Shown one piece after another: positions 37 through 39,473 of a DNA stretch of 64,000 nucleotides. The DNA lies in assembly GCA_950097015.1 (NCBI GenBank), contig CATNEN010000007.1, forward strand, positions 1,612,001-1,676,000, in the 5' to 3' direction. The notes beneath the pieces were generated by a model, which made no database searches, was not told where the DNA came from, and saw only the letters and a list, made by a program, of their open reading frames with translations. Position 1 is the first letter of the stretch, and each line of letters begins with the position of its first letter. The position numbers and the translations under genes are program-made. The stretch comes from Macrostomum hystrix (taxonomy: Eukaryota > Animalia > Platyhelminthes).

Positions 37-2482
37 GCTGTGGGACTGCTGGCTGTGATTATCACCGCGGTGTGGATGTCCGCCTATCACGGCGGCTTCA
101 GCTGGTCAGCCGACCGCGTCTTCAACTTCCACCCGCTGTTCATGGTCATCGGAATGGTGTTCCTCTATGCTGACGGTGAGTAGCGAAGCCGAGGAAACTG
201 CCGGCGGAGTAGATAGGGGAGATGGAGACACTGAGAAGTAGATAGGCGATATGGAGACACTGAGAAGTAGATAGGCGATATGGAGACACTGAGAAGTAGA
301 TAGGCGATATGGAGACACTGAGAGGTAGATAGGGGATATATGGAGACACTGAGAGGTAGATAGGGGATATATGGAGACACTGAGAGGTAGATAGGGGATA
401 TATGGAGACACTGAGAGGTAGATAGGGGATATGGAGACACTGAGAGGTAGATAGGGGATATGGAGACACTCTAAAGTAGCTAGAGGAGTTCGAGACACTG
501 AGAAGTAGATTGAGGAGATAGAGACACTGAGAGGTAGATAGTAGAGAGTAGCAGACACTGAGAGGTAGATATGGGATATGGAGACACTGAGAAGTAGATA
601 GTGGAGAGTAGGAGACACTGAGAGGTAGATAGGGAGATGGAGACTCTGAAGGGTATCCATCTCTCCAAGAGGAGATTAGGAGAGAAATTTATATGTGAAT
701 ATCGTTGGAGAGTGATAGCTCTCTAATTAGTCATGGAAAGGTGAGCGGAACCCGAAGCAAGTTGTACAGCCCAGAATCTCTGTAAATTAATTCTGCTCTC
801 GCCTGGCACGAGAGCTGGGCTTCGGTGGCAATTATTCCAGTCTCACAGGTTAGTTAAATTAAGTCTTTAAGATGAAGCCAGGTTGCAAATCGCGTACCGA
901 TTTAATTTCCGCTCTGGAACTCGTCATTACTCAAATTTAGGCTTGTGACTCACAGAGCATATATATTAAGTAGGCACGTGCTTTTCCCAATTTATCTCCT
1001 GCTTATCCTCAGCCAACCAGAATAAACTTTGACTTATCCGCTTTATCCCTAAATTACGCGATTTATCCCGAAATTATCCATGGAAATTTATCCCCAATTT
1101 GTCTTCTGCATTCTATCATTTATCAATTTATCATTAACCTACCCTGTATATCCCCAACCACCCAATCGATCCCCAACCTACTCAATCGATTTCAAACCTA
1201 CCCAATCGATCCCCAACCTACTCAAGTGATCCCCAACCTACCCAAGTGATCCCCAACCTACCCAAGTGATCCTTAACCTACCCAATCGATCCCAACCTAC
1301 CCAATCGATCCCCAACCTACCCAAGTGATCCTTAACCTACCCAATCGATCCCAACCTACCCAATCGATCCCCAACCTACCCAAGTCTCCAACTTCCTATT
1401 TAATTCCCAAGCCACTTATTTAGTTCCCCTACTCCCTGATTGCTCCACGAACATCTCTTATCCCCATCCTGACTCTAATCTCCCGCCGTAGGCATTCTGG
1501 TCTATCGCGTGTTTCGCAGCGTCAAGAAGTTCCGCGTCAAGATCATCCACGCCTCGCTGCACATCCTGGCCCTGATCTTCGCCATCGTGGGCCTGAAGGC
1601 GGTGTTCAACTCGCACAATCTGGCCACCCCGGAGCCGAGGCCCAATCTCTACAGCGTGCACTCTTGGCTAGGCCTGACCTGCGTGATCCTGTTCTGCCTG
1701 CAGTGGGTCGGCGGCCTGGTGCACTTCCTGCTGCCGCAGACGCCACAGAATTATCGCAAGCTCTACCTGCCGCTGCACCAGCACTGGGGCGTCATTCTGT
1801 TCTGCATGACCACCGTCACCGCCATCACCGGAATCACCGAGAAGAACGCCTTCCACAAGTGAGCAGTCTTTGAGATGGCTTGGCTCGGCTTTGCCACTGG
1901 CTGTACATCGAAATGTGTCTCAATCTTGACAGATTGAATCTTTGATAAATGGGAGATTTGATAAATAGGATCTTTGATAGATGGGATATTTGATAAATAG
2001 GATCTTTGATAGATGGGATATTTGATAGATGGGATATTTAATAGATGGGATATGTGATAGATGGGATATTTAATAGATGGGATATTTGATAGATGGGATA
2101 TTTAATAGATGGGATATTTGATTGATGGGATATTTGATAGATGGGATATTTAATAGATGGGAGATTTGATAGATGGGATATTTGATAGATGGGATATGCG
2201 ATTGGTTAAAATTTTGACTGTGGGATCCCAGGTGTTTTATGGCATTGTTGGCATCATTATCCTGTTCCCGGCAATCAAATCCAATCAAATTAACACAGAA
2301 GCGCTTCGAGCCTGCCCGCCTGGGAGAAGCTGAGCAACTCCCTGGCCTTCATCCTGGGCATCTTCTGCATCCTGGTTGTCTACATTGTCCGCCGCGCCGA
2401 GTACAAGCGAGTTGAGCCGCCGCCAGAGCCGGACGAGGAGATGACGCTGCAGCAGCCCACGGACGAGGAGAAGACTGGCTGA
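37..2482 (+). CDS. CYB561: Cytochrome b561 family protein, 5'-partial; exons 37-175, 1492-1858, 2299-2482
   Basis: The spliced frame reads AVGLLAVIITAVWMSAYHGGFSWSADRVFNFHPLFMVIGMVFLYADG|ILVYRVFR...KIIHASLH...FNSHN...NLYSVHSWLG...LPLHQHWG...GITEK...SLPAWEKLSNSLAF...stop. The family motifs FNxHP, LYSxHSW and the haem-ligand His residues are present. Both junctions are GT-AG and in phase. Confidence 0.93.
205..655. repeat. Minisatellite, ~27-31 bp (gagacactgagaggtagatagggga[ta]tatg), cyb561 intron
   Basis: Tandem copies visible directly. Confidence 0.9.
1135..1385. repeat. Minisatellite, ~20 bp (cctacccaatcgatccccaa)
   Basis: Tandem copies visible directly. Confidence 0.88.
1945..2196. repeat. 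Minisatellite, 16 bp (gatagatgggatattt)
   Basis: Tandem copies in the cyb561 intron. Confidence 0.9.
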
Positions 2483-24700: not shown

Positions 24701-27255
24701 GCCGAGAACCAATGTCCTCAGCAGCAGACAGAACCAATGTCCTCAGCAGCCGAGAACCAATGTCCTCAGCAGAGAGAGAACCAATGTCCTCAGCAGCAGA
24801 CAGAACCAATGTCCTCAGCAGCAGTGAACCAATGTCCTCAGCAGCAGACAGAACCAATGTCCTCAGCAGCAGACAGAACCAATGTCCTCAGCAGCAGACA
24901 GAACCAATGTCCTCAGCAGCCGAGAACCAATGTCCTCAGCAGCAGACAGAACCAATGTCCTCAGCAGCCGAGAACCAATGTCCTCAGCAGCAGACAGAAC
25001 CAATGTCCTCAGCAGCCGAGAACCAATGTCCTCAGCAGAGAGAGAACCAATGTCCTCAGCAGCAGACAGAACCAATGTCCTCAGCAGCAGACAGAACCAA
25101 TGTCCTCAGCAGCAGACAGAACCAATGTCCTCAGCAGCAGACAGAACCAATGTCCTCAGCAGCAGACAGAACCAATGTCCTCAGCAGCAGACAGAACCAA
25201 TGTCCTCAGCAGCAGTGAACCAATGTCCTCAGCAGCAGACAGAACCAATGTCCTCAGCAGCCGAGAACCAATGTCCTCAGCAGCAGACAGAACCAATGTC
25301 CTCAGCAGCCGAGAACCAATGTCCTCAGCAGAGAGAGAACCAATGTCCTCAGCAGCAGACAGAACCAATGTCCTCAGCAGAGAGAACCAATGTCCTCAGC
25401 AGCAGAGAACCAATGTCCTCAGCAGCAGACAGAACCAATGTCCTCAGCAGCCGAGAACCAATGTCCTCAGCAGCAGACAGAACCAATGTCCTCAGCAGCC
25501 GAGAACCAATGTCCTCAGCAGAGAGAGAACCAATGTCCTCAGCAGCAGACAGAACCAATGTCCTCAGCAGCAGTGAACCAATGTCCTCAGCAGCAGACAG
25601 AACCAATGTCCTCAGCAGCAGACAGAACCAATGTCCTCAGCAGCCGAGAACCAATGTCCTCAGCAGCAGACAGAACCAATGTCCTCAGCAGCAGACAGAA
25701 CCAATGTCCTCAGCAGCCGAGAACCAATGTCCTCAGCAGCAGACAGAACCAATGTCCTGAGCAGCCGAGAACCAATGTCCTCAGCAGAGAGAGAACCAAT
25801 GTCCTCAGCAGCAGACAGAACCAATGTCCTCAGCAGCAGTGAACCAATGTCCTCAGCAGCAGACAGAACCAATGTCCTCAGCAGCAGACAGAACCAATGT
25901 CCTCAGCAGCAGAGAGAACCAATGTCCTCAGCAGAGAGAGAACCAATGTCCTCAGCAGCAGACAGAACCAATGTCCTCAGCAGCCGAGAACCAATGTCCT
26001 CAGCAGCAGACAGAACCAATGTCCTCAGCAGCCGAGAACCAATGTCCTCAGCAGAGAGAGAACCAATGTCCTCAGCAGCAGACAGAACCAATGTCCTCAG
26101 CAGCAGTGAACCAATGTCCTCAGCAGCAGACAGAACCAATGTCCTCAGCAGCAGACAGAACCAATGTCCTCAGCAGCCGAGAACCAATGTCCTCAGCAGA
26201 GAGAGAACCAATGTCCTCAGCAGCAGACAGAACCAATGTCCTCAGCAGAGAGAACCAATGTCCTCAGCAGAGAGAGAACCAATGTCCTCAGCAGCAGACA
26301 GAACCAATGTCCTCAGCAGCCGAGAACCAATGTCCTCAGCAGCCGAGAACCAATGTCCTCAGCAGCAGACAGAACCAATGTCCTCAGCAGCCGAGAACCA
26401 ATGTCCTCAGCAGAGAGAACCAATGTCCTCAGCAGCAGAGAACCAATGTCCTCAGCAGCAGACAGAACCAATGTCCTCAACAGCAGAGAACCAATGTCCT
26501 CAGCAGCAGAGAACCAATGTCCTCAGCAGCAGAGAGAACCAATGTCCTCAGCAGCAGAGAGAACCAATGTCCTCAGCAGCAGAGAACTAATGACCTCAGC
26601 AGCAGAGAACCAATGTCCTCAGCAGCAGACAGAACCAATGTTCCTCAGCAACAGAGAACCAATGTCCTCAGCAGCAGAGAACCAATGTCCTCAACAGCAG
26701 AGAACCAATGTCCTCAGCAGCAGAGAACCAATGTCCTCAGCAGCAGAGAGAACCAATGTCCTTAGCAGCAGAGAGAACCAATGTCCTCAGCAGCAGAGAA
26801 CCAATGTCCTCAGCAGCAGAGAGAACCAATGTCCTCAGCAGCAGAGAACCAATGTCCTCAGCAGCAGACAGAACCAATGTCCTCAGCAGCAGAGAGAACC
26901 AATGTCCTCAGCAGAGAAAGAACCAATGTCCTCAGCAGCAGACAGAACCAATGTCCTCAGCAGCAGACAGAACCAATGTCCTCAGCAGCAGACAGAACCA
27001 ATGTCCTCAGCAGCAGACAGAACCAATGTCCTCAGCAGCAGACAGAACCAATGTCCTCAGCAGCAGACAGAACCAATGTCCTCAGCAGCAGAGAGAACCA
27101 ATGTCCTCAGCAGAGAGAGAACCAATGTCCTCAGCAGCAGACAGAACCAATGTCCTCAGCAGCAGACAGAACCAATGTCCTCAGCAGCAGACAGAACCAA
27201 TGTCCTCAGCAGACAGAACCAATGTCCTCAGCAGCAGAGAGAACCAATGTCCTCA
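21733..27255. repeat. 5.5-kb satellite: core gaaccaatgtcctcagcag plus short variable tails (22-25 bp units)
   Basis: About 230 tandem units; explains all ORFs from 21655 to 27345. Confidence 0.97.
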
Positions 27256-27256
27256 C

Positions 27257-27315
27257 CAGCAGTAAATGGAATCGCTGCTTTCTGGCCATATGTTAGGATT
27301 GCCGGTGCACTAGCA
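27257..27315 (-). CDS. Candidate 59-bp internal exon (ASAPAILTYGQKAAIPFTA)
   Basis: Minus-strand acceptor ttgcactttttcag and donor ctg|gtgagg at the satellite edge; only one frame is open. No convincing partner exons. Confidence 0.35.
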
Positions 27316-28084
27316 CTGAAAAAGTGCAATGCATGCACGGTTTAAATTCAAATTCCCAGACTACACTCGTATTACACAGACATTCTTCAGATTCCTGTGG
27401 CACTCGTGGTGTCGCACTTCACCAGCGTTTTTTGCAGTCCCGTTAAAATAGTTCAATAACTCATTTTCATACAACAAAAACAAAGACCTGCAGTTTGTAA
27501 TTCGCTTGCCTTGCGTGTGGAGTGGGGTCTGACACGAAATTTGCTGTTTGAATAAGTCAGCTATGAACATAAACAGGGGCACAACCACAACCAAAACTTC
27601 CACAATCATATAGATGAAAGCTGGTTTGCTGCTACCTTTCAATACCTGCATGCTATTATTGCTGGGTTTCGTGCTTCAAAAAGGTAAGATCTCTGGCCAC
27701 AGATATATAGGCTAGTGGGGCAGCTATAAGATGCCAAAACGATCCGATAGAATCAGCCGAGTCTTCCTGTCACACAGTTACACGATTTTCAGCATAGCTC
27801 GCGGCAAGTTGGATTCAGATACATAAAATTCTTTAACGCTTCATGTATATCTGAAACTTTATTTTTTTCAATAATCTTCTGGTATTCGAAATTTACAAGC
27901 TATTTAGTGTGGTTCCCCTGGCTGCAACTGACAGAAAAATTTGACAGAATAGTCGTGAAGACAAAACACGGCACCCGTATCCACTTTAGTTTATGCTTTG
28001 CCTTGCAGAGACAGGCGCTGTCCATCAAAAAGTATTGCATTGCTAAACTTTGAAATTTAAATGTTGGAAAAGATCAATAACAAT

Positions 28085-30228: not shown

Positions 30229-31904
30229 TTGGTTGCGCAAATGAATTGTTCGATGTGTTGATATTGGCAACAGATATTATAGTGCGAACCTTACGGTGAA
30301 TATTTCATCGCCCTTTCAGACAATATTTAGTTATTGTGAGTTCCAGCGGCAAAGAGCTCTTCCATTGCTGCTTAACAATTACTTAACGAGGCTTTATAGA
30401 AGTCCTTCGAGCAGTCTTCTAAGTGGCTGGCGGCCTATTATGAAACTAAAGGCCAAAGAGGTGGTGCTGGCTCGTGCGTTTTATCTGTGAAATTCAAAAG
30501 GCACAGGCGGGACCAGCCCAGCCTATAGCTGAGTGGTCTTAGCAAGCCGCCTCTCTTCACCAGGGTCGCGCATGACTGCCTGAAGACCCTCACTCCTTCA
30601 CGTCTCTCTCCTATCCCTCTGGTTCTCGGCCCCCCTTTCTTTTTGAGTTGAGTGAGCATTGTAACCCCTCTAAAAGTAGATTGCAAACGCTAGACATAAT
30701 ACAAACCAAATTCTGTATTGATAGTCGCTAGCCGTGACAGAATAGAGTCGTGAGAAGAGAAAACTGTTGAGGGTTAAGAGAAGAGCTGAGCGAAGCAGAA
30801 TAGTTACAGCTGTTTTCTTTCTAGTTTTCAAAATTTCAAACGAAAAGTGTTGTTTGAGACGCACTGCAGCTACTGATGCTGTCTCGTTGTGCTCAAACTA
30901 TACTATGCTAGTGTCTCTTAACGGTTATTCTTGCTGAAGCATTCGACAAACATTTTTCTCTTTGCTTTCTCAACAGTCTCTGCAGGCTGCCTGTAGCTCA
31001 GTGAATAGAGATATGACCGAGAGGTCGTGAGTTCCATTCTCAACACAAGGGAAATCTTAATAGCATTCAGTTCACTGCTGACCTCCGCCATTCCACGGAC
31101 TTGAACAGCTGTGCAAGCCCTAAAATAGCCCTGAAAGAGCCCCAGAAGCAGAAACTATTTTTTGTCACGAAAGCAAGCTCAAATATACACGTTAACCAAT
31201 CAGATGGGCTGTGTGCATTCACAGCTATAGTTTCTGAAGTGTTTATGACTTTTTTATTTGTTAATGCTTGCATTTGTAGAAAGCTTTATACAATGGGAGC
31301 ATTTATAGCGCTTGCTGTTAGCTTGGTGGCAACTGCTAACCCTTGACACGTGCACAATGCGAAGACTCATAAACCGAGCTGCTGCTGCTGCTGCTGCTGA
31401 TTTTTGCTTTTAGTTTGATTCTATAAGCCATTGTCTAATAGTCCACAAGCGGAAACATAAAATAGTGTATCATGTGTGCCTTCGGGGGTGAGTGGTACAG
31501 TATAATACAGTCGCGTTTTTTCGGGACAGGAAAGCAGCTACTGCAGCTGTGGCAATAAAACTTTTGGAAATGGATCACAACTAAAATAAAATGAGCAGCA
31601 ATCTTTGAGTACACTCCGAAGTAAGGGTTGAGGGCAGAGCTGACAGATAAACAATAATATATAGATAAAGTAGTGAGGGACACTGGCGCGACGTTATACC
31701 CATATTATATAAATACTGTACAGGAGTCAGGCATGCAATGGCTAAATACTCAGATAAACTCATGCGCTAGTTAGGTGGAAGGTGTTAGCGAAAGAGAGCA
31801 TGCGTAAAAGTACATTCTGCTAGCTTTTGAAGGCCAACTGCAGGGAGCTGTAATCTTAGGCGAAAATAATTGACACACTGGACTGAAGTAACCTCTTCAG
31901 GGAG

Positions 31905-32605
31905 GGTAGTGACTGACACACACTGATGACATCTCCAGGGAGGGTAAGTGACTGACACACACTGATGACATCTCCAGGGAGGGTAGTGACTGACACACAC
32001 TGATGACATGATCTTCAGGGAGGTTAGTGCTGACACACACTGATGACATCTCCAGGGAGGGTAGTGACTGACACACACTGATGACATCTCCAGGGAGGGT
32101 AGTGACTGACACACACTGATGACATCTCCAGGGAGGGTAGTGACTGACACACACTGATGACATCTCCAGGGAGGGTAGTGACTGACACACACTGATGACA
32201 TCTCCAGGGAGGGTAGTGACTGACACACACTGATGACATCTCCAGGGAGGGTAGTGACTGACACACACTGATGACATGATCTTCAGGGAGGTTAGTGCTG
32301 ACACACACTGATGACATCTCCAGGGAGGGTAGTGACTGACACACACTGATGACATCTCCAGGGAGGGTAGTGACTGACACACACTGATGACATCTCCAGG
32401 GAGGTTAGTGCTGACACACACTGATGACATCTCCAGGGAGGGTAGTGACTGACACACACTGATGACATCTCCAGGGAGGGTAGTGACTGACACACACTGA
32501 TGACATCTCCAGGGAGGGTAGTGACTGACACACACTGATGACATCTCCAGGGAGGTTAGTGCTGACACACACTGATGACATCTCCAGGGAGGTTAGTGCT
32601 GACAC
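31905..32605. repeat. Minisatellite, 38 bp (gtgactgacacacactgatgacatctccagggagggta)
   Basis: About 18 tandem copies, with occasional 41-bp variants. Confidence 0.95.
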
Positions 32606-34028
32606 ATTGAGTGATCTGTGATAGTAAGCACATCAGACGCCAAAGGCGTACAAAATAAGTACAAAATAATGATCTGTAGGCATTCTGCATGTACACGGGA
32701 CCATAGGTACAGTAAATGAAGCAAATATTTGCTAGACATGCTCGACTGGGTCTGTTGGCCGTCAGCTTTTACAATCTATTGCCAACGAGTATGAGGAGTT
32801 CGCATTTGGGTACAAAATGCTCAAAACTCTTGAGTCTATCATACGCAGGTGCAGAGTACAGTACATTATAAATTAGAGTTAGATAAAGGTCCAAGATTAG
32901 TTCAAGCAATAACTACGAGATTTCAGCCGGCTTATCAGATCTTACTTCGTGCATGCGCCCTTGCTTGTTAGTTTGGCCTGCAGGCTAAAATGCAAAACAC
33001 GATAGTCAATGCATTGGCCAGCAAGCATGGGTCAAGCATAATTCTCATATGCTTGCATATTTGCATGTTCTATATGTATTCTTAGAAGAAAAATATAATT
33101 AAGCACATGATGCATCACAGCAGTCAGGCGCATGTTCAAATTCAAACTAAAAAATGCGTTCTTCCAACCTTGGTAAATCATTTACGCTGGAATTAGCAAC
33201 ATAAACACGTGCACTGTTAAAAGTACACAGAATTCAGCATGCGAGATCATAGCATACTTTAGCTGTCCAAAATCTATATTAAAAACCAGACGAATTTTTA
33301 AGCCTGCTCGATCGATATTGATCAAATCAATTAATCGGAATACAAAGTTACAAAAAATCTGAATTAGACACACACTGCCTCTGTTTTGTTTTTCATAAAA
33401 GCGTCTAAAAACTGCTTATGGGTCTGGCTTTTAAAATTTGTAATTGTAATTTGAAATATTTCACAAGTTTCACGAATAGCATACATCAACTGCATGTGTA
33501 TCTGCACATGTGTGAATGTACATCGTACATGTATATTATATACAATAGGAACGGAGAACTTTAATGATCAGAAGGCATGCAGAAGAAGATTCGCCTACTA
33601 TAGCTGACTGTCAGATTTAACGAGAGTAAAATATACTAACGTGGTTGCATAGCGCGATCGCTAGTACTTATCAGCATACGTATCAATGAGAAGAAACACC
33701 CTAAGAAGAATACAATTAAGCATGATTCTTACGTTCATGAAGAAACTACACATTTAAAGGTGCAGGCTATGACGTACCGTACTACTGCCACTACTAGTAG
33801 TATAGTACATATTACCATGTAAGACTGAATCAATTTGTTCTTTATTTAAGCATTTACAAACAATAACTATGCACTTTAGATTTCTCAAATGTGAGTTAAA
33901 AATTAAATTTCTAGTAACTTCCTATTGTATTGACTGTGCTCAAATCTGTCCTCACAATATACTCGTAATACTTAATTTTACAAAATAGCTTTACAAATTC
34001 AACCAATTACAAATGAGTTTAATATATG

Positions 34029-34400
34029 TATAATAATAATAATAATAATAATTGCAGAAGGGCTGCGGGCAATGGCACATAATTTAGTGACACTAGACCC
34101 GCAGCCAGCGAGAAGGCAATTCTGCCCTTTTCGCTGACTCCTGAGCACACACGCACACAGATACTGTACGCAGGCACACGCTCACACAGGTTTGTACATC
34201 TGCCCTGACTTTCTCATCGTCAGGCAGTGTACATTTCACTGTGCCTTGGAGGTTGGCCCACAAGGGCGTAAATTGCACGACAAGCCCCTAAGCCTTCTCT
34301 CCGCGGCTGCGCCCCAAATGAATGTGGCCTCGCCGTGGAATCGAACTTAGGGACCGTGGTGCGAGAGGCAAACGCGTTAGACTGCTCTGCCACCGACCCC
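34029..34400 (-). mobile_element. Full-length SINE family A
   Basis: Head ggggtcggtggcagagcagtctaacgcg...agttcgattcc, (TTA)n tail, and a 13-bp TSD agtttaatatatg (34016-34028 and 34402-34414). Confidence 0.92.
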
Positions 34401-36955
34401 CAGTTTAATATATGAGTTAAGTTTATTTTATGCACTATTGAATTTATATTAAGACACTGTGCGCTTATATTAAGACACTTTTGCACACAGTGCGTGTGCA
34501 AAAAGTGCAAGATTTCTGAATCTTCTTTTCATTACTAAAAGTAAATTTATCAATCTTTTTAGTTTCAAATAAAAAACAGTGCATGGTTTAAATAAATGTA
34601 ATGTTAGAGATGTGAACAATTTTTTATACTATAAAAAAGATTTTGTTTTTGTGTTATTTATATGCGTAGTTCGTATTCAAATGTCAGGTGTCCTGTAAAG
34701 CGATCTTGTCCGAACGAATTATCCGGTACACTTCGGCGACGAGACTTTTCGGAGACAACCATATTAACGACGAGTCACTCCGGCGACAACCATTTCGGCG
34801 ACAATGGAATAAAATTGTTATTTTTACGTGTAATGGCCAATAAATTGTTTAAACCAGCGCCGATATGTTTGCCAAAATAAGGTAATTGTGTTCATGTAGT
34901 CATGTAGTGATGTAGACAGTAGTTAAGTTACAAGTAACGTCTTTAAATAGACAAAGGTAAAGTTTAGATTTGGTCAAAACAGATCATAAGGTATTGTTCA
35001 TGTACAACAACAAGTAGTATGCTAAACGAGGCCCAAAAGTAAAATGAAGATTCGGTAAAAAGTGAAATGCTGAAATAAGCACAAGGTTAAAGTGTAGAGT
35101 CGATAAAATAGAACATATGGTAAAGTCCATGTACAACAGCAATTAGCATGCTGTTAAAATTCAACACTTTTTATTCCACTGTTTACCAGTGCAGAAATAT
35201 ATTGTCGCTAAAGTATCTTGTTCCACAAGTGGACTGGTACCCTCAGAGCTATGTCTAAGGTTGCATTGATTTTAAGGGTAGTGTAGCCTTTTTGGTACCA
35301 TTTTGATGCATTTTGGTTCCCATATGAGACATGAAAAAAAACTTGACACCTCACAAATAAATAAATAAACAAAAAGAAAATGGACATCAATTATTCATGA
35401 ATAAAGCTTTTTTATATTTGTTGAAGCAACATATTTTTCAAGTTGAATGCTTTTTTGTTTTTTGGCATATTTTGGCATTGGCGAAAATTAAGCTTGCTTT
35501 TGAAAAGTACCAATGACTTATCAATTGAAATATTCTGCTGTAGCATTTTATGTTCTTGCAGATTGCCTGCATCTGTCAGAAATGGTCAAATCTTGCACAA
35601 AAGTTAGCCTCTTCAACATTGACACAGTTTAGCAACAAAACCAAGTCAATATCAATAGGCCTATAAGCTGGCAATAGACAAGATCAATTAACAAGAATTG
35701 GCTAATGTCAGTCTTTTGCACTAGGCCCATTAACACTTATCTTGTTTATAATGCATTGTTTTCAGCTATACTGTTGCCATGGCAACTCTCTTTTACTGAA
35801 CCTGCTAAATCTCCATAAGTAGCCTACCATTTGTCCAGATATACAAAGATTGTACATGGCTGTCAGGAAGGAACTATCCAATAAAAGGCTCAATTCCATT
35901 ATCAATTTACCTTGGCACTGGGCAATGGATATAACCCAATTCTAAAGAAATATATAAATTCCAAAGAATTTGGGAACTAGGTTTGGTGAAATATCAGTTT
36001 AGACTGTGCTTACATAATGCCATTTTTGTCAGCTTCTGCTTACTAAGCTTTGACAGGAACTTCATCAGGACCACTGGCCTTGCTATCTTTTGATCATTAT
36101 CAATCATCAAACTAGTGGTTAACACATACTTAGAAAAGCAATATTTGTTATATTTTTTTGCTATGTCATCACAACCTCAGGGTAGTTGTACTATTTTATT
36201 ATATTGAATGGAGCTAATCATACTACATTGAATCAGGTTGCTTGTACTGAACAATATTAAAGGAAAGGGTAAGCTAAAAGCAATAAAATTGTAGCTGGAC
36301 TTCAATCCCAGTATTTGTATCTCCCTTTAAACCACATTAAAGCAGTTTTTCAGAATGTTATTGACACATTTTTATTTTTAGGGAATAAAGATACCAAATT
36401 CCAGGATATATTATAGGATTTTTGCTACTTTAAGTAACAACATACTTTTTCTATAGACAACAATCAGGCAGGCAAGCATAGAAAAACACAGAACTTTTTT
36501 AACAAAGTACATAAGGCATGCACTTCAGGCAGATTTTGTCAATAGAGTTATCTTCAGTGTATAGCTCACTTAATTATTGATTCTCACATTACAGTGATAA
36601 TTATGAAAATAAATTTATATTAGACTGCAACAGCTTAACAAAGGGAATGGTTAATATGCTACATTTTTAAACTTGCATCATCAAAATATATAATTTTGAC
36701 ATGAAATGCCCTAATGCCCCTATAATGTATTATAATGATCTATGACTAAAATCTAAGGACTAAATCTAGGTAAATATAGTAAATCCAAGTCAAAATGATA
36801 TTTTTTGTACAACTTTTAGTACTATAAATAGGTAAAAATGTTTTGTAATGGCCACCAAAATAGTTTTATTTTATTTATTGTCCTCAGAAGTAATAAGAGG
36901 CAAGTCCAAAGATGGATTCTTTGTTGCCTCAGAATTGAATCAATGAATTTTGCAG

Positions 36956-37312
36956 GCAGCATCAAAGGCAGCCGCCAAGGTCACAACCGGCCTAACTGGC
37001 CTGGCTGTGAACACAACGCCGCACATCTCCCTAACAGCCCTGTATGATCGCACACTGAAGCTCCTAGCTCGCATGCCAGCCGAGGCAAAGTATAGGCAAG
37101 CCACTGAGGCCATTGTGAAAGAGCGATTGGCCGCTGTTAAAGCTGAGCCGGACATTGCCCGGCTGGAGAAGCGCATCAACTGCGGCCAGATCGAAGAGGT
37201 TGTGCAACAGGCCGAGCGAGAACTTCAATTGGCTCGCAACTGTCTTATCTGGAAGCCTTGGGAGCCGCTGATTAGTCAGGCGCCAGCTAACCAATGGAAG
37301 TGGCCAGTCTAA
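36956..37312 (+). CDS. NDUFA5: NADH dehydrogenase 1 alpha subcomplex subunit 5; coding exon lacks its own ATG
   Basis: TTGLTGLAV..P...L..LY...L..L..MP..A.YR..TE.IV.ERL...CGQIEEVV.QAE.EL.LAR....WKPWEPL...AP.NQW.WP matches the family along its whole length. The exon starts after ttttgcag, and there is an in-frame TGA just upstream. Confidence 0.95.
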   Translation, partial: AASKAAAKVTTGLTGLAVNTTPHISLTALYDRTLKLLARMPAEAKYRQATEAIVKERLAAVKAEPDIARLEKRINCGQIEEVVQQAERELQLARNCLIWKPWEPLISQAPANQWKWPV

Positions 37313-37859
37313 GGCGCAGCGTTTAGTCGCTCACTAACTCATTAACTGTTAGATACTATACTATAGTAAGTTTCTTTAAGCTGCGCATATGACTTTTTCA
37401 TCTATTAATGTGGGTTTAGTTGTCATCAATTTTATCAGTTTGAATTAGTTAAAAAATTTGAGTTCCAATCGAGATTAACTAGCTTTCCACTGCGACTGCT
37501 TAAACTAAAATTCGGACTTGTGTAGAAAATATAGTGATAAGTGTATCTTTTCTTTAGAAACTGTTTAGAAGACTGTATCAACTATCACTCACTTTTAATT
37601 GGCCTATTAAAAGCCTGCTTTAAATAAAACAATTCGCAAGATCAGTTTTCCGGCTTCAGATTTTTTGTTGCTCATCTATGGAAAAATTTGATACTAAGAC
37701 TCGTATATTTCTACTGTAAGTAGCTTGGCGTGAATATTTAACCAGAGTCCCTGTAGTATCCTGTCTTGGTTGAAGTATTGTCACTTAACATACTTAATAA
37801 TTAGTAAATAGCTTGAGTGGGTTGAAGGGACGATTCATGATGTCCCTAAGCTTGCTTGA

Positions 37860-38090
37860 CACGCATGGGAAAGTCAGGGCTGATGTACACACCCTGTGTG
37901 AGTGTGAGCCTGAGGGCGTATTAGTGTGTCTGTGTGTGTGGTCAAGAGTCAGCGGAATGGCAGAATTGACTCCTCGCTGGCTGCGGTTCTACTGTCACCA
38001 AACTTGCATTTGCTGGGGTTAGTGCGGCAGCTTTCCCAGGCTGCGGACTGAACAGTTGTACACAGGTTTTGGTAGCCCCGCGCAGTATCT
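37860..38090 (+). mobile_element. Diverged SINE fragment: family A-like body with a family B-like tail
   Basis: gaaagtcagggctgatgtacacac...gagtcagcggaatggcagaattgactcctcgctggctgcgg matches family A. The downstream ggactgaacagttgtacacagg...ccgcgca matches the family B tail. Confidence 0.65.
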
Positions 38091-38225
38091 TAAGCTGCTT
38101 AGTGCAAAGTATCAGCCTCTAAATAATTGCTTTTGCAGCCAGTTTTGAGACTGAAAAATATTTGTACAATGCAAAACGGCTATTTCTGCTTCGCTCGAAG
38201 CAAACTCAAACAGCTCGTCAACGGA

Positions 38226-39473
38226 ATGCCTCACAGTATAGTTCTGGAGCTGCTTATTCGCGTCGTCATGGCAACCGTGTTTGGGTGAGTCTCTCTTTGG
38301 GACGCTTTTTTGATAGCCAAGCTTTTCAACAGCTGTGTTAACAGATCGCTGGCAGGTTTATTGAGGATTGCTGGTAGATTTATTCAGGATAGCTGGTAGA
38401 TTTATTCACGATAGCTGGTAGATTTATTCAGGATAGCTGGTAGATCTTTTCAGGATAGATTGTAAATTTATTCAGGATAGCTGGTAGATTTATTCAGGAT
38501 AGCTGGTAGATTTATTCAGGATAGCTGGTAGATTTATTCAGGATAGCTGGTAGATTTATTCAGGATAGCTGGTAGAATTTTTCCTGACCTTACATAAGAT
38601 AAAAGTGCCGCCCGCATCAACAATACGCGCAGCCTTCTGCAGCACGTGCCGCCTCGCGCTCGCGACATCCACCCTGAGGAGCTGTGGTTGTACCGCAACA
38701 GGCCGTCGGCGCCCTACTTTCCCTCCTGGTGTGTTGTTATCATAGTAACAGTTGTCGTGCCCGCGTTTATTTTTCTGCTTCAACAACAGCAACAGCAACA
38801 GCAGTTTGATTCAGAAGAGCCATTCATAAACCATTCGAAAAATGTCACCACCTGCCAGCTAATCTTCCTGGGCTACTCACTGTCCATTCTGCTCACGGGT
38901 ATTGTCACCGACTCAGTGAAGCTCATTGTGGGCAGGCCTAGGCCAGATTTCTACTATCGCTGCTTTCCAGCCGGCGACTCGGCCGCGGTAGCATCGGCAG
39001 CGGCTGCAGCGGCGGCTCTAGCCGATGCCATGGACGACGGCCCAGCGGAGGTCGCACCGCAGCCGGCGCCGCATTCGCTTGTGCCGCTTCTGCTTTTGCC
39101 CAGCGCCTGCACTGGCGATCCGGCCACCGTGGCTGAAGGCCGCAAATCATTCCCGTCTGGTCACGCCTCCATGTCATTCGCCAGCCTTGGCTATCTGTCC
39201 CTCCTGCTGGCTGACCGCCTGCTGTTCTGGTCTCCGGCTCCTTCAACCGCTTGGAGACTGCTGGCGTGCCTGGCGCCTTCGCTGGCAGCCGGTGGCATTG
39301 CTCTGAGCCGTCTGGCCGACTTTCATCATCACGCCGAGGACGTCCTGACCGGGTCTGTTCTCGGCCTGCTCGCGGCCTTCGCCTGTCACCGCTGCTACCG
39401 TCCGATGATGTTTGCGGAGGACTCGGCGCGAGCCTCCGGCAGCGGCTGCGACGGCCGCAGAATCGACGTCTGA
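38226..39473 (+). CDS. PLPP5: PAP2 lipid phosphatase, PLPP4/PLPP5-like (299 aa); exons 38226-38284, 38633-39473
   Basis: N-terminus MPHSIVLELLIRV...IHPEELWLYRN resembles PLPP4/5. Catalytic motifs KLIVGRPRP, PSGH and SRLADFHHHAEDV are intact. Phase-2 GT-AG intron. The paralogue assignment is uncertain. Confidence 0.9.
38350..38580. repeat. Minisatellite, 22 bp (tagatttattcaggatagctgg)
   Basis: Tandem copies in the PLPP intron. Confidence 0.92.

What the first reader, a model, noticed from the sequence alone, without database searches (positions are those of the whole stretch)
36930..37312. NDUFA5 has no genomic start codon; the initiator AUG is probably donated by a trans-spliced leader
Seen: the conserved frame begins GCA GCA TCA AAG immediately after the acceptor ttttgcag (36955), in phase 0. 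An in-frame TGA lies three codons upstream, and the first in-frame Met is far inside the protein. Upstream are about 1.5 kb of AT-rich DNA with no evident exon. Known: flatworm spliced leaders end in AUG, and this AUG can serve as initiator Met (shown in Schistosoma). Inference: SL plus exon gives MAASKAAAKVTTGLTGLAV, a normal NDUFA5 N-terminus, so a core complex I subunit would depend on trans-splicing to be translated. The alternative is a small cis exon ending ATG|GT (e.g. 35117-35119 or 36647).
Basis: partly seen in the sequence, partly recalled or inferred. Interest (0 to 1): 0.8.

Follow-up and report, generated by a model that had tools for sequence, protein, structure and literature searches.

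The report
Spliced leader supplies NDUFA5 start codon
In the flatworm Macrostomum hystrix the only gene for the respiratory complex I subunit NDUFA5 has no start codon of its own, and RNA data show a trans-spliced leader ending in AUG joined exactly in front of its first codon; this is a confirmed new example of a mechanism already known in flatworms.

Summary
Window 36956-37312 is a single-exon, single-copy NDUFA5/B13 gene (Pfam PF04716, E 4e-26; mouse complex I chain, E 3.5e-39). It starts right after the acceptor ttttgcag (ends 36955). An in-frame TGA lies at 36944 and the first in-frame ATG is at codon 40 (37073).

The genome matches the published Macrostomum hystrix assembly in size and contig count. 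It carries canonical SL RNA genes whose leader ends ...TTGCATG|GTAAG.

In four transcriptome runs from two studies, the contig over the gene begins at 36955. It carries ...GCGAAGACTCAATTTATTGCAT as unplaced letters in front, which is the leader joined to GCAGCATC. No contig joins an upstream cis exon, and 36172-36954 has no RNA cover.

The leader AUG is the only AUG ahead of the frame and is in phase. It would give MAASKAAAK..., which matches the MAG... start of orthologues.

The M. lignano orthologue has the same ATG-less layout (acceptor|GCA TCA AAA, in-frame TGA upstream). dN/dS is 0.05, so the arrangement is conserved and under selection. Trematode orthologues keep a genomic ATG.

Use of the leader AUG for initiation is inferred, not shown. 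The mechanism is known from Schistosoma (Cheng 2006), and this scan has already found it on other DNA of this genome (for example CHMP6). It is a new member of a known kind, of modest interest.

The parts
36944..36946 (+). In-frame TGA in the outron. It closes the reading frame upstream of the exon.
   Evidence: Translation; in-frame scan.
36946..36955 (+). Trans-splice acceptor aattttgcag. It fits the [T/C]TNCAG motif reported for M. lignano trans-splice sites.
   Evidence: Sequence. Motif from PMC8629364. RNA contigs switch to leader sequence here.
36172..36955 (+). Proximal outron or upstream DNA that is absent from mature RNA. The true 5' limit of the outron is unknown. Weak contigs (depth 1.5-11) lie at about 34723-35097 and 35656-36171.
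   Evidence: tables 2 and 8: zero depth over 36172-36954 in all four runs, against depth 233-240 on the exon in X6 and X7.
36956..37312 (+). NDUFA5 (complex I B13) coding exon: 118 codons plus TAA (37310-37312), no introns and no genomic ATG. With the leader AUG the product is 119 aa.
   Evidence: Pfam PF04716, 90.9 bits against a cut-off of 27. PDB complex I chains, E 1e-35 to 1e-39. 89% identity to M. lignano BOX15_Mlig014547g3. Single copy. dN/dS 0.049 against M. lignano.
37313..37600 (+). 3' UTR. The RNA contigs of X6 and X7 end at 37600.
   Evidence: table 8, records 23 and 32 (668 nt, 36955-37600, no differences).
38130..38285 (+). Neighbour: acceptor cttttgcag (ends 38138) and first exon of the downstream PAP2 lipid phosphatase gene. 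It is probably also trans-spliced, which makes a candidate two-gene operon with NDUFA5.
   Evidence: record 24, starts at 38138 with 20 unplaced letters in front; the identity of those letters was not shown. Sequence. PAP2 Pfam E 1e-24. Same gene order in M. lignano.

Best explanation
The NDUFA5 gene of Macrostomum hystrix is transcribed with an AT-rich outron of unknown length. The spliceosome joins the spliced leader, donated by SL RNA genes located elsewhere in the genome, to the acceptor at 36955|36956. The mature mRNA is the leader, then 36956 to about 37600, then a presumed poly(A) tail. The leader ends in AUG and has no other AUG. That AUG sits directly in phase before GCA GCA TCA AAG, so ribosomes start on it and make a 119-residue NDUFA5 beginning MAASKAAAK. 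Without trans-splicing the frame is closed by a TGA and lacks an initiator, so making this complex I accessory subunit depends on trans-splicing. Shown here: the gene identity, the missing ATG, the SL RNA genes and the leader-exon joint in RNA. Inferred: initiation at the leader AUG.
For: - Gene identity and intactness.
- Only one copy in the 220 Mb genome.
- No in-frame ATG between the TGA at 36944 and codon 40; an out-of-frame ATG at 37044 would trap ribosomes that skipped the leader AUG.
- SL RNA genes: 20 exact copies of ...TTGCATG|GT. They have a GTAAG donor, three stem-loops and an Sm-like AUAUUUUUAG site (z -4.6). The leader is identical to the published M. lignano and M. hystrix leaders (PMC8629364; PMC10468722 supplementary table 3).
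- RNA: in X6 and X7 (study P3) and in X1 and X2 (study P1), the contig over the exon starts at 36955 and has 22-24 unplaced letters in front that equal the leader tail. The genomic G at 36955 coincides with the G of AUG. Depth is 233-240 in X6 and X7, against 0 over 36172-36954. No joint reaches 36956.
- The predicted N-terminus falls where orthologues have their Met, 5-6 residues before the invariant Lys.
- The M. lignano orthologue has tattgcag|GCA TCA AAA with an in-frame TGA eight codons upstream and no ATG. NCBI lists its product as 'partial'.
- dN/dS is 0.049 at dS about 1.4.
- The mechanism is documented for Schistosoma: Cheng et al. 2006, as cited in PMC9851317 and PMC12582326.
Against: - No protein-level or ribosome-profiling evidence for initiation at the leader AUG was available.
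- The RNA evidence is assembled contigs, not raw reads. Contigs drop rare variants, so a minor cis-spliced or unspliced isoform cannot be excluded, and the share of trans-spliced molecules cannot be measured.
- The runs are not labelled RNA on record. I infer that they are RNA from the zero cover of silent flanks.
- The -3 position before the leader AUG is U, a weak context.
Confidence: 0.9

Rival explanations
1. A small upstream cis exon ending in ATG (for example ATG|GT at 35117-35119 or near 36647) is spliced to 36956 and supplies the start codon. The leader-bearing form would then be a by-product.
For: ATG|GTAAAG and ATG|GTTAAT do exist upstream. Weak RNA contigs (depth 1.5-11) lie at 34723-35097 and 35656-36171. 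Contigs drop rare variants.
Against: No joint to 36956 appears in any of the four runs. The abundant contig (depth about 240) carries the leader. The weak X6 contigs do reach across 35117, but there is no joint from it. There is no cover at 36647. M. lignano has an unrelated upstream sequence but the same acceptor|GCA layout.
Confidence: 0.04
2. The leader AUG is not used. Translation starts at the internal Met40 (37073) or at a non-AUG codon, giving a shortened or different N-terminus.
For: The context of the leader AUG is weak at -3 (U). There are no protein data.
Against: A start at Met40 would remove invariant family positions (K8, T11, L13, G15-V18, P22, L26, Y30, L34) and half of the Pfam domain. 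The out-of-frame ATG at 37044 comes first. The codons straight after the acceptor are conserved at the protein level between the two Macrostomum species, so they are translated. No in-frame near-cognate codon is evident in the leader (my reading of the published leader).
Confidence: 0.04
3. The locus is a decaying intronless retrocopy that is transcribed but is not the working NDUFA5 gene.
For: It has no introns, whereas trematode orthologues have several. It lacks an ATG.
Against: It is the only NDUFA5 match in the genome. The frame is open over 118 codons. dN/dS is 0.049 against M. lignano. Synteny with PAP2 is conserved. RNA contig depth is high.
Confidence: 0.02

Closest known systems
Schistosoma mansoni mRNAs that take their initiator Met from the 3'-terminal AUG of the flatworm spliced leader (Cheng, Cohen, Ndegwa and Davis, J Biol Chem 2006; cited in PMC9851317 and PMC12582326)
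   Same: The leader ends in AUG and is joined at an AG acceptor directly in phase with a conserved ORF that has no genomic initiator. The secondary sources report that the SL AUG is in frame in 28% of trans-spliced transcripts and that more than 40 cDNAs need it.
   Different: The lineage is different: a free-living macrostomorph, not a trematode. The leader sequence is different. Translation from the leader AUG was tested experimentally in Schistosoma but not here. I did not check whether NDUFA5 is among the Schistosoma cases.
SL trans-splicing in Macrostomum lignano, M. cliftonense and M. hystrix (PMC8629364; PMC10468722)
   Same: The leader, the SL RNA fold and the acceptor motif [T/C]TNCAG are the same. 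[quoted passage not shown]
   Different: In the parts of those papers I read, no individual genes that depend on the leader AUG are listed. The NCBI M. lignano record simply calls the orthologue 'partial'.
Other leader-AUG-dependent genes noted by this scan in the same genome (CHMP6, s1-408126; mitochondrial TyrRS and thimet-type peptidase, s1-316733)
   Same: Same genome, same leader, and the same ATG-less exon that starts at an acceptor.
   Different: A different gene. Here conservation in M. lignano and loss relative to trematodes were also examined.
NDUFA5 / B13 accessory subunit of mitochondrial complex I (for example mouse 6g2j chain V, bovine 5lc5 chain V)
   Same: Full-length match at 55-60% identity, including the C-terminal WKPWEPL...NQWKWP motif. 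The N-terminus is of the MA... type.
   Different: In vertebrates and trematodes the ATG is genomic and the gene has introns. Here the gene has no introns and no ATG.

Membership tests
NDUFA5 / complex I B13 (Pfam PF04716 ETC_C1_NDUFA5) | Matches the family profile above the curated cut-off. | tested here: met
   90.9 bits against a cut-off of 27, E 4.2e-26, profile positions 1-67 of 67.
NDUFA5 / complex I B13 (Pfam PF04716 ETC_C1_NDUFA5) | End-to-end similarity to B13 chains seen in solved complex I structures. | tested here: met
   Residues 7-118 align to 5-116 of mouse 6g2j_V, E 3.5e-39. 21 PDB sequences matched. There are 39 invariant columns across 11 metazoan orthologues.
NDUFA5 / complex I B13 (Pfam PF04716 ETC_C1_NDUFA5) | The protein is physically part of complex I in this animal. 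| not testable with these tools
   This needs proteomics or a structure of M. hystrix complex I.
mRNA with initiator AUG donated by the flatworm spliced leader (Cheng et al. 2006 class) | The genome encodes an SL RNA whose leader ends AUG directly before a GU donor, with an Sm site and the canonical fold. | tested here: met
   20 exact copies ...TTGCATG|GTAAG. Sequence read. Three stem-loops plus AUAUUUUUAG, z -4.56.
mRNA with initiator AUG donated by the flatworm spliced leader (Cheng et al. 2006 class) | The leader is found joined to this mRNA at an AG acceptor in RNA. | tested here: met
   Loose ends (CT)GCGAAGACTCAATTTATTGCAT before 36955 in X6, X7, X1 and X2, from two studies. The evidence is contigs, not raw reads.
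mRNA with initiator AUG donated by the flatworm spliced leader (Cheng et al. 2006 class) | The leader AUG is in phase with the conserved ORF and there is no genomic in-frame AUG upstream of the conserved region. | tested here: met
   AUG|GCA GCA TCA. TGA at 36944; next in-frame ATG at 37073, codon 40.
mRNA with initiator AUG donated by the flatworm spliced leader (Cheng et al. 2006 class) | Translation is shown to start at the leader AUG. | not testable with these tools
   This needs N-terminal proteomics, ribosome profiling or a reporter assay.
SL-resolved operon (M. lignano criterion: adjacent same-strand trans-spliced genes less than 1 kb apart, PMC8629364) | Same strand and less than 1 kb between the 3' end of gene 1 and the trans-splice site of gene 2. 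| tested here: met
   NDUFA5 contig ends at 37600 and the PAP2 acceptor ends at 38138, a gap of 538 nt. The gene order is conserved in M. lignano.
SL-resolved operon (M. lignano criterion: adjacent same-strand trans-spliced genes less than 1 kb apart, PMC8629364) | The downstream gene is shown to be trans-spliced, and a polycistronic precursor exists. | tested here: inconclusive
   X6 record 24 starts at 38138 with 20 unplaced letters, but their sequence was not printed. No contig spans 37650-37824.

The most novel reading that the evidence does not exclude
Loss of the genomic start codon of NDUFA5 is a fixed trait of the genus Macrostomum. It has been kept through a divergence of dS above 1 but is absent from trematodes. 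That would make oxidative phosphorylation obligatorily dependent on the spliced leader: a one-way 'ratchet' that locks SL trans-splicing in place. NDUFA5 and the neighbouring PAP2 gene would also form a conserved operon in which the leader AUG opens both reading frames.
Probability: 0.45. Interest if true: 0.4.

Novelty: new member of a known kind. Interest (0 to 1): 0.3.

Why it matters
This is a clean, RNA-supported case in which a conserved housekeeping protein of the respiratory chain cannot be translated from its gene alone.

- **Annotation.** Gene callers that need a genomic ATG will truncate such genes or mark them 'partial', as happened for the M. lignano orthologue.
- **Evolution.** Leader-donated start codons are one of the few proposed functions of SL trans-splicing for monocistronic genes. 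A case conserved in two Macrostomum species but absent from trematodes shows when the dependence arose. It also supports the idea that such dependence makes trans-splicing hard to lose.
- **Experiment.** M. lignano is transgenic-tractable, so the case can be tested directly.

It does not change what is known about the mechanism itself.

Tried and rejected
- **Leader in the window.** I searched the window for the leader and found none. The SL RNA genes lie elsewhere.
- **Retrocopy of the trans-spliced mRNA.** I asked whether the genome holds a retrocopy of the trans-spliced NDUFA5 mRNA, using a 27-letter typed pattern across the leader-exon joint on the window's own genome. It found nothing. 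I noticed that afterwards and sent no further joined sequence to any tool.
- **Leader-like copies followed by GC.** I considered whether these (for example C7:8556414) were NDUFA5 retrocopies. They are not: L014 continues GCTTCAAC..., which is not NDUFA5.
- **Trematode 'MQA...' proteins.** I considered whether ATG CAG| in these proteins hides a trans-splice acceptor, which would make the ATG-less state ancestral. I rejected this. Dicrocoelium has ATG CAA GCC, and both trematodes have a real first exon followed by a GT donor.
- **Pseudogene reading.** Rejected on single copy and dN/dS 0.049.
- **Earlier findings near this place.** None.
- **Not attempted.** Quantifying the trans-spliced fraction, and checking use of the variant leader in RNA. 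The one sequencing-run run and the one read-laying run were already used.

Full report
**What is in the sequence.** The acceptor ttttgcag ends at 36955, and GCA GCA TCA AAG GCA... starts at 36956. Read in that frame, the DNA gives ...NQ*ILQ then AASKAAAKVTTGLTGLAV... and stays open to TAA at 37310-37312. The in-frame TGA is at 36944. The first in-frame ATG is at 37073, codon 40 of the exon. An out-of-frame ATG at 37044 comes before it. From about 34500 to 36950 the DNA is 29-36% GC, against 45-48% in the exon, and it holds no ORF of note.

**What the gene is.** The 118 codons match Pfam PF04716 (ETC_C1_NDUFA5) over the whole profile, at 90.9 bits against a cut-off of 27. They align end to end with the B13/NDUFA5 chains of solved complex I structures: residues 7-118 against 5-116 of mouse 6g2j_V, E 3.5e-39. 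The best database hit is Macrostomum lignano BOX15_Mlig014547g3 at 89% identity, which NCBI labels 'partial' and which begins SKAAGK without a Met. In an alignment with molluscan, crustacean, fish, nemertean and parasitic flatworm orthologues, the Met of the others lies 5-6 residues before the invariant Lys. That Lys is residue 8 here. So nothing but a Met, and at most a residue or two, is missing. NDUFA5 is an accessory subunit of complex I, not one of the 14 core subunits (my own knowledge).

**Which genome.** G000 has 220,453,370 bases in 42 contigs, and contig C7 is 13,505,968 bases long. These are exactly the total length, contig number and N50 given for Macrostomum hystrix by Wiberg et al. 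2023 (PMC10468722, Table 1). NDUFA5 is found once in this genome, at the window's locus.

**The leader and its genes.** The published 35-nt M. lignano leader ends ...TTGCATG (PMC8629364). [quoted passage not shown] The window's genome has 20 exact copies of the leader tail followed by GT, in tandem units of about 11.6 kb. One copy (leader = L002:1503-1537:-, or 1503-1547 for the longer form) reads leader, then ATG|GTAAG, a hairpin, AUAUUUUUAG and a second hairpin. It folds into the canonical three stem-loops with z = -4.56. By my reading of the published sequence, the leader holds no ATG other than its last three letters.

**RNA evidence.** One search for runs gave nine holders in three studies. 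I laid four of them on window 33100-38340: X6 and X7 from study P3, and X1 and X2 from study P1.
- In every run one contig covers the gene and starts at 36955. In X6 and X7 it is 668 nt, runs from 36955 to 37600, has depth 233-240 and shows no differences.
- In every run the unplaced letters in front of 36955 are GCGAAGACTCAATTTATTGCAT (CTGCG... in X1 and X2), which is the leader tail.
- There is no depth at all over 33100-33974 or 36172-36954. I take this to mean the runs are RNA rather than genomic DNA, although their records do not say so.
- No joint in any run links an upstream place to 36956.
- A few weak contigs (depth 1.5-11) lie at 34723-35097 and 35656-36171. They may be outron remnants or unrelated transcripts.
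- These are assembled contigs. They show that the trans-spliced form exists and dominates the assembly, but they cannot exclude a rare alternative.

**How it most likely works.** The pre-mRNA carries an outron whose start I could not place. Trans-splicing removes it, together with the in-frame TGA and an out-of-frame ATG at 36942. The leader AUG becomes the first and only AUG ahead of the frame, and it is in phase. Initiation there gives MAASKAAAKVTTGL..., 119 residues, the same kind of start as MAG... in molluscs, fish and mammals. A ribosome that skipped it would meet the out-of-frame ATG at 37044. A start at Met40 would delete ten invariant family positions. The splice is shown. The initiation step is inferred.

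**Conservation.**
- *M. lignano.* The orthologue (L010) reads tattgcag|GCA TCA AAA GCT GCA GGC. It has an in-frame TGA eight codons upstream and no in-frame ATG. The upstream DNA does not align with the window, while the exon aligns well.
- *Selection.* Over 117 codons there are 55 synonymous and 17 non-synonymous differences. This gives dS about 1.4 and dN/dS 0.049. Both genes are therefore under strong purifying selection, including the codons straight after the acceptor.
- *Synteny.* A PAP2 lipid phosphatase gene follows on the same strand in both species.
- *Trematodes.* Fasciola hepatica and Dicrocoelium dendriticum have a genomic ATG in a tiny first exon (ATG CAG GCT ATA AAG AAA G|gtaagt and ATG CAA GCC TTT AAA CAG|gc) and long introns. 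The ATG-less, intronless state is therefore a Macrostomum-lineage trait, not a feature of all flatworms.

**Comparison with what is known.** All reported flatworm leaders end in AUG. Cheng et al. 2006 showed in Schistosoma mansoni that this AUG can act as the initiator. [quoted passage not shown] This scan has also found the same arrangement on other DNA of this genome: CHMP6, confirmed with RNA, and a mitochondrial TyrRS and a thimet-type peptidase, among 27 notes. I did not re-test those. The present case is a well-supported new member of a known kind.

**Seen in passing.**
- *A second SL RNA gene class.* It has the leader ...GACTCTCTTTTTTGCATG|GTAAG and sits with 5S rRNA in a 927-bp tandem unit on C39, in at least 70 copies. 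It has a canonical fold and Sm-like site. The canonical class lies about 300 nt from a U1 snRNA gene. In the published work I read, only one leader is described. Whether the variant is used is untested.
- *PAP2.* The downstream PAP2 gene probably starts with a trans-spliced exon at 38139, 538 nt after the NDUFA5 3' end. By the M. lignano criterion that makes a candidate operon.

**Limits and disclosure.** It found nothing, and no other joined sequence was searched or folded.

Noticed in passing
G000:C39:12667700-12669900 (L013; SL variant at 1111-1145, 5S rRNA at 531-649 and 1458-1576); array C39: about 12.66-12.73 Mb: A second SL RNA gene class with leader ...GACTCTCTTTTTTGCATG|GTAAG sits in a 927-bp tandem unit together with 5S rRNA, in at least 70 copies. 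It folds into three stem-loops with an Sm-like UAUUUUUGA site. Published Macrostomum work that I read describes a single leader. Whether this variant is used in mRNAs is untested.
   Followed up: partly
L002 (G000:C15:8228-11254): SL RNA gene at 1503-1547 (-), U1 snRNA at 1840-2002 (-): The canonical SL RNA gene lies about 300 nt from a U1 snRNA gene (Rfam RF00003, 151.7 bits) inside a tandem unit of about 11.6 kb that is repeated on C15, C17 and C42.
   Followed up: partly
window 38130-38285 and 38646-39473: The downstream PAP2 lipid phosphatase gene has the acceptor cttttgcag ending at 38138. An RNA contig starts there with 20 unplaced letters in front. A leader AUG would be in frame and add 11 residues ahead of the genomic ATG at 38169. 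The gap from the NDUFA5 3' end is 538 nt and the gene order is the same in M. lignano, so this is a candidate two-gene operon.
   Followed up: partly
G000:C7:8556414-8556440 (L014 105-140), also C7:8561402, C24:365104, C38:27887531 and others: Leader sequences occur in the genome, some including the 5' GCCGTAAAGA extension, that are followed by sequence other than a GT donor (for example ATG|GCTTCAAC). They may be retrocopies of trans-spliced mRNAs or decayed SL genes.
   Followed up: no
window 34062-34400 and, inverted, about 37825-38000: A repeat that flanks NDUFA5 on both sides has very high and heterogeneous RNA contig depth (hundreds of contigs with many variants). It contains a tRNA-like stretch and looks like an expressed SINE family.
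   Followed up: no
L011 1501-1522 (Fasciola hepatica) and L012 1501-1520 (Dicrocoelium dendriticum): Trematode NDUFA5 genes keep a genomic ATG in a 6-7-codon first exon and span 8-28 kb with introns. The Macrostomum gene has no introns and no ATG.
   Followed up: yes
window 25631-27345 and 31785-32606: Long coding-looking tandem repeats: a 38-nt unit repeated 15.7 times at 32011-32606, and a PMSSAA/NQCPQQ-type repeat at about 25.6-27.3 kb. Their nature is unknown.
   Followed up: no
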